Made by a program: the position numbers and the translations under genes
Notes under the pieces: generated by a model
What the model saw: the letters and a program-made list of their open reading frames with translations, nothing else
The model's database searches: none
What the model was told of the DNA's origin: nothing
Shown: one piece after another, positions 1 through 8,878 of the stretch
Numbering within the stretch: position 1 is the stretch's first letter
How the letters are laid out: the number at the start of each line of letters is the position of its first letter
Assembly (NCBI GenBank): GCA_907165135.1
Contig: OU015566.1
Location: 1,116,001-1,180,000, forward strand
Reading direction: 5' to 3'
Origin: Oikopleura dioica
Taxonomy: Eukaryota > Animalia > Chordata
DNA: 64,000 nucleotides

Positions 1-90
1 AAAAGAGCTCATTTTATGCATTATTAGCGTCATTTTTTCCCACTGTTATCCTAGTTTGATCATAAATTTTCCAACTTAAGAGCGTTTTGG

Positions 91-279
91 TCAACCCTTG
101 TCATCCGAAAAACGCTCTAAAGATGGAAAACGACTGTAATACGACGTTGTTGTGCTGGTCTCTTCTGTTGAGTAATAACTCGTCATATAGTTCTCTTCAT
201 CGTTGCCGTATCCGTAAGGGTATTGGTAAGGATTTGCTCTGACAAGAAGTGGAAAGAGTAGTAAAAAGAAATAAATCAT
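91..279 (-). CDS. Small putative secreted Tyr/Thr-rich protein (possibly one exon of a longer gene)
   Basis: ORF begins with a hydrophobic signal-like segment MIYFFLLLFPLLVRA followed by a Tyr/Ser/Thr-rich stretch; no recognisable family. Confidence 0.3.
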   Translation of the reverse strand: MIYFFLLLFPLLVRANPYQYPYGYGNDEENYMTSYYSTEETSTTTSYYSRFPSLERFSDDKG

Positions 280-3900: not shown

Positions 3901-6900
3901 TCAATCGAGCTCAGTAACTGTCGCTTCTTCTTGAAAAATCGGCTCAGGTTTTGGCAGAATGGTCCTGAAAGGCTGTTGCATTCTTCGTAAATCATCAATT
4001 GTAACTCCATTCGATCTGGTAAATTTGCCATAGTTCGTTTTTCGAATTTCCGACAGTCGGAAAGAAATAACTAAAAAACGGATTTTGTGTTCAATTTTCA
4101 AGAAAACTTACTTTGGCGAACTTCAGTCGATCTGCAGTTGTACCAGCGTTGTGCTTCTTTGACGATCATTTCAATCTTCTCAGAGTTGACATCCCTAAAA
4201 AGAAAAATTAACAAAAAGAAAAGAAAATCTGCTCTTTACTTGATGCTCTCTACCAGCAGCTCTTCTTTCGCAAAAACGATGTTCATCAATCTCCGGATAA
4301 CTTTCGACAGATTCAACCCTCGATCAATCTCTTTTCAGAAAATAAATTCAGCTGAAAAAATTTTAACGATTACCTTCCCGTATTGCCATCAGTCTCGTAA
4401 GAGAACCGTTTTTGTAAACCAACGCTTCGAGCGAACTCGGACTCGGAATATCAATTGAAATAAATTGAGAAGACCCGTCGAATTCGTTTTTTATCTCCTC
4501 AATTTTTTCTTCCCCCGTGTAGAACTCATCAGCAGGTTCTTCTTTTACGATAATCTCTTCCGTCTCTTCTGGTAAACTTTTCGACGCGCTTCTTTCCGAA
4601 GTTTTTTGACCTTTTGAAATCTGATCGTATTTTCTAAAAAGGAGAATTGAAAAAATGAGGCTTTAGTTCAAAATTACCTTTTCTTTGACTCCTTCTTCTT
4701 TTCTGTTTTCTCGTTATTTTTCCACTGTATAAAAGCCTAAACTCAAGTTTAGCCATTTGTAACACTGGTCCCTCTCTTACAGTGACTCCCGTCTCCGTAA
4801 TCTCGATTTTCCAACAAGGGGGAACGACTCCATCCCATTTGAAAATGGACTGGTCTGCTAGGTGCTTTATAAAATCCTTTGGAATCGCGGTCTTTTTCTC
4901 TCCAGCATCCATTTTTCGTTCAAAAACTTGACCTTCCTGCGTTTTTATCTCCGGTGGAATGAACAACGTGAGGAAGAGGCTAGTGATTGGTTGGTGGGGC
5001 CTAAGAAGAGGAGACCCATACTTCCAGATTGGCCGATTCTCGAAAAATGTTTCATTTTTGCAAGAAAATTGGCGAAGAGGTTTTCACAATGTTCGAGTTT
5101 ATTAATAATAAGACAGTCTGTTTCTAGAATTACAGTAATTCCAATTGAGAAGTGATTTTGACGGGTCATTTCGTAAACGACAAGAATTGGTTTTTCAGGG
5201 CGTTTTGGTCATGCATCCTTCATCACGAAGACAGGAGAGACGTTTGGAAAGGCCAGGTCCGATCGTGACTCCGGAAGTAGAATTGTATTCGAATCCGCGT
5301 TTTCGTTTCGCCGAGCCTGTGACGCCCGAAATCATCTCGTTGATTGAGCTGAATTCGGAGCGGCGATTCGGACTTTGGTTCATTAAAAACTCGATCTTCT
5401 TGCCGACGTGGATTGATTCCGGAGTGAGTGGGATTCGCTTGCACTAGAAAATGATTAGGATGAAAATGGGGGAAGGGGAATGATTTTTAACCTTTGCGGG
5501 AGAGATGAAAATCGAGTGTTTGGAACTCAATCGCCTGGGAGAAGAAGTGCTCATCTGAACAAAATCGGTCAGAAAAATGGTCAGGGTTGAAAAACTCACC
5601 GGTAGGGGAGAAAGAGGAACTCCAGCATTAAATCCAGCTTGCCTGATCAGCTCCGTCGTAAAAGTCCCGACAAGAGGGGCAAAAACGGCGTTGTAGAACT
5701 TTGTAATGTCGCCCCGCTCAGAGGTTTTGGCCGAAGTTGAGGCGGTTCTGACGCTGCGATAGACCTAGAAAGGGATGAAAAGGAGTGTTTTAAGAGGAGT
5801 GTTTTACCCTGCTCTTGCATTGAGGCTGGTATCGGTAGGCAGAGAGGATTTCCATGAACTTGATTTCGTTTCGAGGGTTGGACACTTTGCCGACGATGTA
5901 GACGCAGCAGAGGATGATCTGAGTAAACGATTAATACAAGAAGAGCGGCAACAAATCACCTGGTCGACATGTCGATCGAGAAACATTTCTCGTTTCTTCG
6001 TCAGACAGTGTTCGAAAACGTTAAAAATGTATTCGGTAATTTGCTTTGAAAGCCGCAGCCGCCTAAAATGAATCATAATTTCACCCTCTCATTTTCAACT
6101 AACTGTGAAATGTGTTGGATTCTTCTTGTAACGAGGAGGTAAATTTTTCTGTAGAAAAGATGCATCGAGCTGCGCTTTGAGACTATCTTCGCGTCAACCA
6201 CTTTGTCCACTAAATTTTCAACAGGACTTTCTTTTGGGTCATCGCTCTTCGGATCATCGTCGAATAATTTCCGTTTGACGGAGGCTTTGATCGGCGAGGC
6301 AAAGGAATGGCGAAGCGACATCGGCTGAGCTGGAGAATTTGGCAGTTCTTGGGCGTTACGGCGGGTCGTGACATCGGCGCAGGGAGGGACGAAATCGTCG
6401 TTTTTCCAAAGAGGCGATTTGTTTTCCCAGCTTAGTTCTTCGAGAATGCGCTCTTCGATCACAGCCAGATGCTTGACCACGTCTCTTGGTAGACGAAGAC
6501 CTTGAAAAAAAACGACTTTAGAAAGCCTGGAGAGGACAAAGAACTCGGTTAACCCTAACCCATGTAAAAACCTGAGTCAGGGTACTGAAAGAGATATTTT
6601 CAAAGGAAGCCGCGATTCGCGAAGTTTGTTTAGGACCCTGACTCAGGTTTCTACACAAGTTTCTGAGCCAGCGCTAGGAGGAAGAGACTTACCGGAACCA
6701 AGATCAGCTCTCAAAATCAGCTCGATGACCTTGTAAAACTCAATTGGCACAAACAGGTTTTTTTTAAGTGTGCCCGAGAATTTTCGTAACTTTTGATTGG
6801 GTTAATATAATTACAATCTGTAACTTGCAGAATGTAGCCGGGTATTAGTTTACTAATTTGAGATAGAGTTGGTGTCAATATCTATTCTGGTGGTGGAGTT

Positions 6901-8878
6901 ATGACGTCATAAAAATGCATTATAAAAGGGGGCCTTCAACTTTGTGACGTCATAACTCCACCTCCACTGGTGCAAATAACACCAAAAGCTTATTTAACAC
7001 ACTACAGACCCTCCCCAACAAGGTCCAAAAGAGAGAATTGAAATATCTCGACTCTAACACCTTCAAAAACGCTCCACCATTTTTGGGCACACTTAAAAAA
7101 AACCTGTTACAATACTCAACGCCTTCAGAATCAGCTGAAAGTTGTCGTGCGAGGAGTAGCTCCAAAGAATAATCTCCACCGAAACAGCTAGAATCGACTT
7201 GACAACGATTGGTTTTTGAAGAAGGAAGCCCAAATCGCTGATTTTACCAAGACGGTCTCGTTCTTCCAAAAGAATGGACTCGAGGAATCGCCAAAAGAGC
7301 TTCTTCGAGATTTCCAATCGCTCGCTCAGGGACTTGTCTTTCTTCAGCTTCTCTAGAATGGTCTCGGAGGAGGTGTTAACCAGATCTCGAAGGGAGCGAG
7401 AGTGATCTTTCTCGCATGAAGCAAGGAGGGACATCAAGCTCGCTAAAGAAAAATGTCATTTTCTCAAAGAAAACGAAGAAAAGTTACCTGGAATATCAGA
7501 GGAGTCATTCTCTTTGATGAGATCTTTGATTTGCTGGACAGCACGGGTATGCTGAGAGATGGGAGAGGCAGTGCTTTGCGTTTTCGCCAAATATCGACGA
7601 TTTGTCAGAGGTGTTTTCGCTCCAAAAGCAATTGTTGATGAATTTTCGCCAAATGTCTAAAAAGAGGGTTTGATTTTTTTAATAATGATAGAGTTACCGA
7701 GTCTAAAGAGCCAGAATTCCCGGCAGAGCCCTTGACCGGTGTGCCCAAGCTCGAGTCTGCGTCTGGCTTCAAAAAGATCTGCTCATCAAAGTCCCCTCGG
7801 AGAAGAACAAACTCAGAGTACATGTTCTTCAGTTCTCTGATATTCGTTTCGTAGAACTGCCCCTCGAAAGCGCCACAGATTCCCTCCTCGCTATTCGCGT
7901 CGTAGGAAAACTTCGCCTGTTCGTAGAGCTGCGCGATGTGCGGCTCGAACCAGTGGTCGTTGATGCACTGCGCGTCGGCGAGAAGACCTTGGTGCCGTTC
8001 GGAGAGTTTTTCGAGGATGGAGATTTCTTCGCCTTCCGGGACGAATTCGTCCTTGATGAAACCTTTCAAATTCGACTGCAAGAAAACATTTCGAAAGACG
8101 AAATTGACGGAGGCGAGGAGCAAATGATACGAATTGACCAGATCGCCAGCGACTTTCGGAAATTGACTCTTTGTATGAATGAAGAGCAGCCAGGTGAATT
8201 CTTTCAATTGCTCGTGCCCAAGTGGACGTTTTCCTTTTCGTCGGCCGGGAGTGGCGAAGCAGTTTATTCGGAAGACGTCGGTGAAGATTGGCGCGAATTT
8301 CTTGTAGATGACGGTTACCACTGAAAAGAAATTGAATTCTGGAATGTCTTCTAAAATTTTTTGCTTACCAGAAAAGTTCTTCTCCAACTGCTCAATTTTC
8401 GCGTTGAAAGTTTCGCCCAACTGCGCCATTTCCGACCAGCGTTTGATTTTCTTCATGAAATCAATGAGCGAAATGTTGACTTCGTCGAGCAAGCTCATCA
8501 GCGAGATGCAGTTTCCATTGATCTCCCGCCCGTTCATACAGGTATTGACTGTCATTGAACAGGCGGCGAATATTGCACAGCCAGCCCAGACGTCGGAACT
8601 GCCTTCGAGAGTGAAGGTTTCGGAAACCGAACTGTAGACTTTCCAAGCGCGTTCTAGAGTCGTCTAGAAATAACGAATTAAGTCTGGGTGTTTGATTCTC
8701 TAGCAAGAATCGAGATTCAAAATTATATAAATTGTCTCTATTTTGATAAGAAAGAGGAATCCCCTCATTTCAAGTAACAATTATTTTACTAGAATCAAAT
8801 TTGAAAACATACCTGATCTAATGCAAGCGTTTGAGCAAGTTCAGTCATTTTATCCGTCGGAGAAAGCTCATCGCCCAT
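3901..8878 (-). CDS. RBL1: Retinoblastoma-like pocket protein (p107/p130 type), multi-exon
   Basis: N-domain WLLFIHTKSQFPKVAGDLVNSYHLLLASVNFVF; A-pocket EFYKVIELIL; B-pocket DRHVDQVICC and DITKFYNAVF; start exon MGDELSPTDKMTELAQTLALDQ. RBL1 versus RBL2 orthology not resolvable by eye. Confidence 0.9.
6563..6655. mobile_element. 93-bp MITE in an RBL intron
   Basis: 20-bp TIR tgtaaaaacctgagtcaggg / ccctgactcaggtttctaca (1 mismatch); related copies at 25623-25724 and a partial end near 9388. Confidence 0.7.
6752..7108. mobile_element. 357-bp MITE inserted in an RBL coding exon
   Basis: Perfect 24-bp TIR aacaggttttttttaagtgtgccc; 3-bp direct repeat ACA at 6749-6751 and 7109-7111; removing the element plus one TSD restores ...ALSI-VPIEFYKVIE. 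Confidence 0.88.

What the first reader, a model, noticed from the sequence alone, without database searches (positions are those of the whole stretch)
6749..7111. Transposon sitting inside a conserved exon of the retinoblastoma-like gene
A 357-bp element with perfect 24-bp TIRs and an ACA TSD splits the A-pocket codons ..AGT ATT GTG CCA ATT GAG TTT TAC AAG (SIVPIEFYK). The TSD plus TIR creates a donor ATT|GTAACA on the coding strand, but exact excision would end in TT rather than AG. In-frame GT-AG alternatives exist: an AAG at 6790-6791 adds 13 aa (LRKFSGTLKKNLF), and the downstream GAG deletes 4 aa (VPIE). A gene expected to be important would then be rescued by imprecise splicing or by a non-AG acceptor.
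Basis: partly seen in the sequence, partly recalled or inferred. Interest (0 to 1): 0.75.

Follow-up and report, generated by a model that had tools for sequence, protein, structure and literature searches.

The report
Young transposon splitting Oikopleura's Rb gene
A small, recently inserted jumping element sits in a strictly conserved coding exon of the only retinoblastoma-family gene in the Okinawan Oikopleura dioica reference genome; it most likely marks a broken gene copy carried next to an intact one, not a new intron, and no RNA data could be checked.

Summary
A 357-bp MITE lies at 6752-7108, with perfect 24-bp terminal inverted repeats and a 3-bp ACA target-site duplication. It splits the RB_A-domain exon of a minus-strand pocket-protein gene, between the codons for SIV and PIEFYK.

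- **Genome:** it is O. dioica OKI2018_I69. The window lies on autosome chr1, so the sequenced male is diploid here.
- **Gene:** this is the only RB_A/RB_B locus in the assembly, and every other exon is open.
- **Empty site:** twelve exon sequences from other O. dioica-like DNA (96% and about 76-81% identical) and two metagenome contigs carry the uninterrupted site.
- **Family:** it is small and young. Seven other full copies each have their own 3-bp duplication, and none of them splits a recognisable coding exon.
- **If retained:** translation stops five codons into the element.
- **Splicing:** the junction does create a donor, GTAACA, with the same GTAAC core as two genuine introns of this gene. 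Exact removal cannot end in AG. The stop-free, in-frame AG acceptors are all weaker than the gene's seven real acceptors, and they change a stretch that aligns without gaps to human p107.

Best reading (about 0.6): a recent insertion allele that is probably loss-of-function and probably heterozygous. Splicing rescue is unproven. The scan's notes list at least eight similar exonic insertions elsewhere in this genome.

The parts
6749..6751 (.). Target-site duplication, copy 1 (ACA; TGT on the coding strand)
   Evidence: Direct repeat of 7109-7111. All 8 full copies of the family have matching 3-bp flanks, each with a different sequence.
6752..7108 (.). 357-bp non-autonomous TIR element (MITE). 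It has stops in the gene's frame and no long ORF.
   Evidence: Dispersed copies at 98, 97, 97, 93, 93, 86 and 78% identity.
6752..6775 (+). Left terminal inverted repeat, 24 nt (AACAGG, then T8, then AAGTGTGCCC)
   Evidence: exact match, 0 expected by chance.
7085..7108 (-). Right terminal inverted repeat, 24 nt, perfect complement of the left one
7109..7111 (.). Target-site duplication, copy 2 (ACA)
6869..6985 (.). Internal 45-nt inverted repeat of the element, carrying two TGACGTCA palindromes (6902-6909 and 6945-6952)
   Evidence: I1, D3. These columns are invariant among six copies.
7112..7442 (-). Upstream part of the interrupted exon. It matches RB_A profile positions 27-146 and ends ...ALSI(V).
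6693..6748 (-). Downstream part of the same exon (PIEFYKVIELILRADLGSG), ending at the conserved donor G|GTAAGT
7105..7110 (-). Cryptic donor GTAACA, made from TSD (GT) plus TIR (AACA). It has the same GTAAC core as genuine introns 7697-7657 and 7487-7443.
7093..7095 (-). First in-frame stop (TAA) if the element is retained. The protein would end ...SIVTGFF, without the end of the A box, the spacer, the B box and the C-terminus.
6790..6791 (-). In-frame AG acceptor inside the element (+13 aa). The 15 nt upstream are A-rich, about 47% pyrimidine.
   Evidence: The 15-nt pyrimidine figure was counted by hand from the sequence shown.
6739..6740 (-). In-frame AG acceptor in the exon (GAG; removes VPIE). 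G at position -3.
6730..6731 (-). In-frame AG acceptor in the exon (TTTTACAAG; removes VPIEFYK)
6501..6692 (-). Genuine downstream intron (GTAAGT...T8CAAG), 192 nt. Its donor position is conserved in relatives.
6556..6662 (.). Older palindromic MITE inside that intron (arms 6563-6589 and 6629-6655)
   Evidence: I3; dozens of dispersed matches in the genome, the near-full-length ones at about 71-77% identity.
5200..8830 (-). The whole pocket-protein (p107/RBL1-like) gene, approximate limits. All other exons are open.
   Evidence: It is the only RB_A/RB_B locus in the genome.

Best explanation
A non-autonomous cut-and-paste transposon (a MITE with a 3-bp target-site duplication) recently inserted into the coding exon for the end of the A box of the single pocket-protein (Rb/p107-type) gene of Okinawan Oikopleura dioica. 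This insertion allele was the one kept when the two haplotypes of one heterozygous male were merged into the haploid reference.

The unspliced transcript stops five codons into the element. The protein would lack the end of the A box, the spacer, the whole B box and the C-terminus, so this allele is most likely null or strongly weakened. I infer that it is covered in the animal by an intact allele on the other chr1 homologue.

Shown here: the element, its family, the empty site in relatives, the single-copy status of the gene, the autosomal location, and the splice-site options. Inferred, not shown: heterozygosity, and loss of function.
For: - **Real mobile element:** perfect 24-bp TIRs and a 3-bp duplication. 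Seven other full copies each have their own 3-bp duplication.
- **Young:** it differs at 6-12 of 357 positions from its three nearest copies and has only 3 private changes.
- **Derived state:** P0007 (96% identical) and 11 members of the P0008 cluster read straight through the site. DNA of two metagenome contigs shows the unoccupied site and the same downstream donor.
- **Genome identity and ploidy:** contig lengths 14,533,022, 17,092,476 and 16,158,756 equal chr1, PAR and chr2 of OKI2018_I69 (PMC8008620). The window is therefore autosomal. The assembly comes from one male with about 3.6% heterozygosity, merged with HaploMerger2 into a reference and an allelic sub-assembly.
- **Premature stop:** retention gives a stop codon at 7095-7093.
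- **Not built for splicing:** its 3' end on either strand has no pyrimidine tract and no AG, and none of the other seven full copies splits a recognisable coding exon.
- **Weak rescue options:** in the 15 nt before the AG, the in-frame acceptors have about 47-60% pyrimidines and 20-47% T. The gene's seven genuine acceptors have 67-93% and 47-60% (the values for 6791/6790 and 6731/6730 were counted by hand).
- **Conserved target:** the affected stretch aligns without gaps to human p107.
Against: - Zygosity was not measured.
- This is the only pocket-protein gene, and its other exons show no decay. That also fits an allele still under selection because it is spliced.
- The donor GTAACA has the same core as two genuine introns of the same gene, so some splicing from it is plausible.
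- If the three private substitutions arose after insertion, the allele would be rather old for a recessive lethal. They could equally come from an unsampled source copy or from consensus error.
- The scan's notes list at least eight other young TIR elements in conserved exons of this assembly. That could mean a high load of polymorphic insertions, or a general tolerance of them.
Confidence: 0.6

Rival explanations
1. The element is removed by imprecise GT-AG splicing. The TSD-made donor at 7110 pairs with an in-frame acceptor, giving +13 aa at 6791/6790, -4 aa at 6740/6739 or -7 aa at 6731/6730. The result is a working or partly working pocket protein: a newborn intron.
For: The donor core GTAAC equals that of genuine introns 7697-7657 and 7487-7443. 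Four in-frame, stop-free AG options exist. The gene is single-copy and otherwise intact. Transposon-derived introns are documented in larvaceans (PMC11282704; PMC13326754).
Against: All in-frame acceptors have fewer pyrimidines than the seven genuine ones, and the -4 aa site has G at -3. Two other in-frame AGs inside the element (7055/7054 and 6968/6967) lie closer to the donor and lead to stops after 19 codons. The altered residues (VPIEFYK) are identical in 12 O. dioica-like sequences and sit in a stretch with no gaps against human p107. There is no transcript evidence.
Confidence: 0.2
2. The element is removed exactly, through a non-AG acceptor (GT..TT or AA..GT). This could work as in Fritillaria borealis, or be helped by pairing of the terminal repeats in the pre-mRNA.
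For: Exact removal of 360 nt restores the ancestral codons. The transcript is predicted to fold with its ends paired: -132.6 kcal/mol, z = -8.2. F. borealis, another larvacean, splices MITE-derived introns with non-AG ends.
Against: The F. borealis signature, a YAY triplet before the intron and at its end with AG at the intron start, is not met: here the triplet is TGT and the intron would start AA. That system coincides with extra U2AF paralogs described only for the F. borealis lineage. The prominent non-canonical class reported for O. dioica is GA-AG, which keeps the AG. Strong folding is expected of any element with long inverted repeats.
Confidence: 0.05
3. The insertion is not a germline allele. 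It would be an assembly or consensus artefact, or a somatic insertion.
For: The assembly is Nanopore-based with haplotype merging. No second copy of the locus is present for comparison.
Against: A complete element with perfect repeats and a clean 3-bp duplication at a site that restores an open frame is the signature of true transposition, not of a mis-join. There are no Ns or breaks nearby.
Confidence: 0.05
4. The allele is fixed or homozygous, and the pocket protein is dispensable in this lineage.
For: O. dioica is known for gene losses (my own knowledge, not tested here).
Against: The exon is strongly conserved across 12 environmental O. dioica-like sequences, and all other exons of this allele are open.
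Confidence: 0.03

Closest known systems
Segregating transposon-insertion (loss-of-function) alleles in coding exons. Classical examples are maize Ds/dSpm alleles, where part of the element is removed through cryptic sites near its ends (my own knowledge, not checked here).
   Same: A cut-and-paste element with TIRs and a TSD sits in an exon. There is a premature stop if it is retained. A cryptic donor is created at the element's edge. The empty site is present in relatives.
   Different: Zygosity, the transcripts and the phenotype are all unknown here.
MITE-derived non-canonical introns of Fritillaria borealis (Henriet et al. 2019, cited in PMC11282704; PMC13326754)
   Same: A larvacean tunicate, a MITE with TIRs and a 3-bp duplication, located in coding sequence.
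   Different: There is no YAY triplet and no AG start. No splicing evidence exists. The U2AF-beta paralogs tied to that system are described only for the F. borealis lineage. The family here has only about eight full copies, one of them in a coding exon.
Introner elements (Micromonas and others; Huff et al. 2016, Gozashti et al. 2022, as summarised in PMC11282704)
   Same: A short DNA transposon with TIRs and a 3-bp TSD, where one splice site is formed from duplication plus element.
   Different: Introners occur as hundreds to thousands of copies that are introns, and they co-opt an AG from the duplication. Here the family is low in copy number, mostly outside coding sequence, and offers no AG for exact removal.
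Human p107/RBL1 pocket domain (PDB 4YOO, 4YOS)
   Same: The interrupted exon aligns to it at E = 4.6e-14 with no gap across the insertion point (...LNLQPFYFYKVIE...).
   Different: This comparison concerns only the host gene, not the element.

Membership tests
MITE (non-autonomous class II TIR transposon) | Terminal inverted repeats | tested here: met
   24/24 perfect, 0 expected by chance.
MITE (non-autonomous class II TIR transposon) | Target-site duplication of fixed length with varying sequence among copies | tested here: met
   3 bp in 8 of 8 copies: ACA, TAA, AAT, TAA, TCT, TGA, ATA, TTT.
MITE (non-autonomous class II TIR transposon) | Dispersed, similar copies; small size; no coding capacity | tested here: met
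   Copies lie on four chromosome-scale scaffolds. The element is 357 bp, with only short stop-free stretches in the three minus-strand frames.
MITE (non-autonomous class II TIR transposon) | Empty site in related genomes | tested here: met
   Protein level; DNA level.
A named DNA-transposon superfamily (PIF/Harbinger, CACTA, Zator and others with a 3-bp TSD) | An autonomous partner encoding the superfamily's transposase with the same termini | tested here: inconclusive
   Four unpaired termini were inspected over 8 kb each. Only host-like ORFs were found (C2H2 zinc finger, sestrin-like) and no transposase domain.
Retinoblastoma/pocket protein family | N-terminal domain plus A box plus B box, in that order | tested here: met
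   DUF3452 at 3.9e-31, RB_A in two pieces, RB_B. The best solved relative is human RBL1.
Transposon-derived intron / introner | Splice sites at or near the element's ends that allow frame-preserving removal | tested here: inconclusive
   The donor GTAACA is plausible. There is no AG for exact removal. The in-frame AGs are weaker than all seven genuine acceptors of this gene.
Transposon-derived intron / introner | Transcripts in which the element is spliced out | not testable with these tools
No O. dioica gene model was retrieved.
Transposon-derived intron / introner | Many family members that are themselves introns of genes | tested here: not met
   Only this one of 8 full copies splits a recognisable coding exon. 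L007 lies within a larger (about 700 nt) presumed intron, L004 lies between two ORFs, and the rest show no convincing coding sequence across the site (ORF inspection only).
Fritillaria borealis-type non-canonical intron | A YAY triplet before the 5' splice site and as the last three intron bases; intron typically AG...AC/AT | tested here: not met
   The triplet on the coding strand is TGT, and an intron in that register would be AA...GT.

The most novel reading that the evidence does not exclude
The element is a newborn intron in the only pocket-protein gene of a chordate. O. dioica's spliceosome would use the donor created by target-site duplication plus terminal repeat, together with a weak or non-AG acceptor. 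Carriers would then make a working protein, possibly changed by a few residues, and exonic MITE insertions would be broadly tolerated in this species.
Probability: 0.15. Interest if true: 0.7.

Novelty: new member of a known kind. Interest (0 to 1): 0.3.

Why it matters
If this is a heterozygous broken allele, it is an ordinary piece of genetic load. It is also a caution for users of the OKI2018_I69 reference: the only Rb-family gene is represented by an interrupted allele, which can cause wrong gene models or false reports of gene loss.

If carriers instead splice it out, it would be a dated, polymorphic case of intron birth from a transposon in a chordate cell-cycle gene. It could be tested directly by comparing filled and empty alleles in one culture.

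The scan's notes list at least eight similar cases in this genome. A single genome-wide zygosity and RNA test would settle all of them together.

Tried and rejected
- **Second or allelic copy of the locus:** I searched the assembly for one and found none.
- **Second pocket-protein gene:** none found.
- **Representative-library search with the 115-aa exon:** it returned only six hits. The best was a 335-aa appendicularian-like fragment at 49% identity, with no O. dioica full-length model.
- **Word-index search with the 352-aa N-terminal exon:** one 200-aa environmental hit, and no truncated gene model.
- **Profile of separate exon pieces aligned to a full-length fish RBL1:** swamped by teleost RBL1, with no O. 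dioica protein among the 120 listed. This was a wasted search.
- **Heuristic intron set from the window for a splice-site matrix:** too noisy. I rejected it and used the gene's own seven homology-defined introns instead.
- **Search for an autonomous partner element:** nothing found.
- **Spliced protein:** I did not build or search a joined (spliced) protein. All searches were made exon by exon, by reference.
- **Variant proteins:** I did not fold or model the +13, -4 or -7 aa variants, because they have no reference.
Full report
**What is there**

Positions 6752-7108 hold a 357-bp element. Its first and last 24 bases are perfect reverse complements. A search with up to three mismatches finds only these two sites in the window, against none in 100 shuffles. 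It is flanked by a direct ACA repeat at 6749-6751 and 7109-7111. Inside it is a 45-nt inverted repeat with two TGACGTCA palindromes.

**The host gene**

The gene is on the minus strand.
- Stop-free stretches match DUF3452 (8663-7608), RB_A (7455-7111 and 6501-6076) and RB_B (6088-5807).
- The RB_A match covers profile positions 27-146 in the piece above the element and resumes at position 164 in the next exon. The 19 codons between the element and the next intron supply the part in between.
- Deleting the element plus one ACA joins the two sides into one 150-codon open frame reading ...ALSIVPIEFYKVIELILRADLGSG.
- Element plus duplication is 360 nt, so the frame is preserved, but the element carries stops. 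Read through, the protein ends ...SIVTGFF at the TAA at 7095-7093.

**The genome**

The assembly has 64,281,565 bases in 19 contigs. Contigs C4, C1 and C5 measure 14,533,022, 17,092,476 and 16,158,756 bases. These are exactly the lengths given for chr 1, PAR and chr 2 of Oikopleura dioica OKI2018_I69 (PMC8008620).

The window is therefore chr1:1,116,001-1,180,000, on the short arm of an autosome. The assembly comes from a single male with about 3.6% heterozygosity. Its two haplotypes were merged by HaploMerger2 into a 'reference' and an 'allelic' sub-assembly, and only the reference is available here. A second allele of this locus therefore existed in the sequenced animal.

**The element family**

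The genome holds seven other full-length copies, at 98, 97, 97, 93, 93, 86 and 78% identity, plus fragments and a related family of about 532 bp that shares the terminal AACAGG-T8.

Every full copy has its own 3-bp duplication: TAA, AAT, TAA, TCT, TGA, ATA and TTT. This is a true MITE with a 3-bp target-site duplication.

The exact 24-nt terminus, allowing two mismatches, occurs only 11 times in the genome, so the subfamily is small. The Rb copy differs from its three nearest relatives at 6, 10 and 12 positions and has 3 private changes, so it is young.

I found no transposase next to unpaired termini, so the superfamily stays open.

Only the Rb copy splits a recognisable coding exon. By ORF inspection, the 86% copy (L007) lies in a presumed intron of about 700 nt in a gene with WD40-like repeats, L004 lies between two ORFs, and the rest show no convincing coding sequence across the site.

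**The empty site**

A word search with the 115-aa exon piece found two hits:
- P0007: 96% identical, from Logan and ENA assemblies.
- P0008: 75% identical, representing a cluster of 11 environmental sequences.

All of them read straight through the site as (S/N/D)IVPIEFYKVIELILRADLGSG and then run into the same donor.

Two JGI metagenome contigs, L039 and L040, show at DNA level ...atcgtgccaattgag... followed by the same GTAAGT donor. A more distant 335-aa appendicularian-like fragment (P0001) has ...DIHPYEFYKVIELILRAELGSG....

The insertion is therefore derived and specific to this lineage or this individual.

**How important is the gene and the site**

RB_A and RB_B each match only this locus in the whole assembly. 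No second copy of the flanking exon exists. All other exons are open and align to teleost RBL1 and to the appendicularian fragment.

The best solved relative is the human p107 (RBL1) pocket (PDB 4YOO), at E = 4.6e-14. The alignment has no gap across the insertion point.

**Can splicing rescue it**

On the coding strand the junction reads ATT|GTAACAGG. Two genuine introns of this gene, 7697-7657 and 7487-7443, also begin GTAAC. The donor is therefore credible.

Exact removal of 360 nt can only have the termini TG..TT, GT..TT, TA..TG or AA..GT. None of these ends in AG.

In-frame AG acceptors without a downstream stop lie at four places:
- 6791/6790: +13 aa.
- 6740/6739: -4 aa.
- 6731/6730: -7 aa.
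- 6722/6721: -10 aa.

The seven genuine acceptors of this gene have 67-93% pyrimidines and 47-60% T in the 15 nt before the AG. The first three of these candidates have about 47%, 60% and 53% pyrimidines, and the -4 aa site has G at position -3 (the values for 6791/6790 and 6731/6730 were counted by hand).

Two other in-frame AGs inside the element, at 7055/7054 and 6968/6967, lie closer to the donor. Both lead to stops after 19 codons.

The terminal repeat does contain a good acceptor-like T8AAG. It sits at the 5' end of the element in either orientation, which is the wrong end for removing the element.

The pre-mRNA is predicted to pair its ends strongly (z = -8.2). That is expected of any long inverted repeat.

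**What the literature says**

- The prominent non-canonical intron class reported for O. dioica is GA-AG, which keeps the AG (PMC7072748). About 11% of OKI2018_I69 introns are non-canonical (PMC8008620).
- Non-AG, MITE-derived introns are known from Fritillaria borealis. There they carry a YAY triplet signature and coincide with duplicated U2AF subunits specific to that lineage (PMC13326754; PMC11282704).
- Neither signature is present here: the triplet is TGT, and an intron in that register would start AA.

**Verdict**

The most economical explanation is a recent insertion allele of the single pocket-protein gene that is probably loss-of-function. It would have been captured by the haploid merge and masked in the animal by an intact homologue (confidence about 0.6). 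Heterozygosity and loss of function are inferences, not measurements.

The rivals are:
- In-frame cryptic splicing, about 0.2.
- Exact non-AG removal, about 0.05.
- Artefact or somatic event, about 0.05.
- A dispensable gene, about 0.03.

One point cuts against my reading. If the three private substitutions arose after insertion, the allele would be old for a recessive lethal. They may equally come from an unsampled source copy.

**Context from the scan**

Earlier notes, which I did not check, list at least eight other young TIR elements in conserved coding exons of this same assembly. The named genes are SUZ12, MTAP, HGSNAT, ERO1, PRKX, WDFY3, a HEAT-repeat gene and a coiled-coil gene. The follow-ups mostly reached the same 'polymorphic, probably broken allele' verdict. 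This finding is therefore one more member of a pattern the scan has already seen on other DNA of this genome.

**Limits**

- No RNA data, reads or allelic sub-assembly were reachable.
- No O. dioica gene model was retrieved.
- I did not build or search a joined spliced protein. Searches were exon by exon, by reference.
- A profile made of separate exon pieces aligned to a fish RBL1 was swamped by teleost proteins.

Noticed in passing
window 6501-6692 (element at 6556-6662): The intron just downstream of the interrupted exon is 192 nt, while neighbouring introns of the gene are about 40-45 nt. It contains an older palindromic MITE with 27-nt arms. That MITE has dozens of dispersed matches in the genome, the near-full-length ones at about 71-77% identity. 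The intron's donor position is conserved in relatives, but its content is not.
   Followed up: partly
window 6902-6909 and 6945-6952: There are two TGACGTCA palindromes (CRE/ATF-type sites) inside the MITE's internal inverted repeat. These columns are invariant among six copies of the family.
   Followed up: no
G000 C4:1327554-1328085, C1:2475242-2475773, C1:12635217-12635748, C4:8466283-8466814 and others: A related MITE family of about 532 bp shares the terminal AACAGG-T8-AA but has a different inner repeat (AACGTTGCAC). One copy lies about 200 kb from this window.
   Followed up: partly
L007 (G000 C5:13238699-13242055), element at 1501-1857: An older copy (86% identical) lies in a gap of about 700 nt between two minus-strand ORFs, 2182-2394 and 937-1476, that look like exons of one gene with WD40-like repeats. 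This looks like an insertion into a pre-existing intron, not an intron made by the element. It rests on ORF inspection only.
   Followed up: partly
whole genome G000 (scan notes): The scan's notes list at least eight other young TIR elements inside conserved coding exons of this one assembly (SUZ12, MTAP, HGSNAT, ERO1, PRKX, WDFY3, a HEAT-repeat gene and a coiled-coil gene). As a set they call for one genome-wide zygosity and RNA test, comparing hemizygous X/Y scaffolds with autosomes.
   Followed up: no
window 1-131: An earlier first-reader note (s1-396840) reports another inverted-repeat element in coding sequence at the very start of this window. I did not examine it.
   Followed up: no
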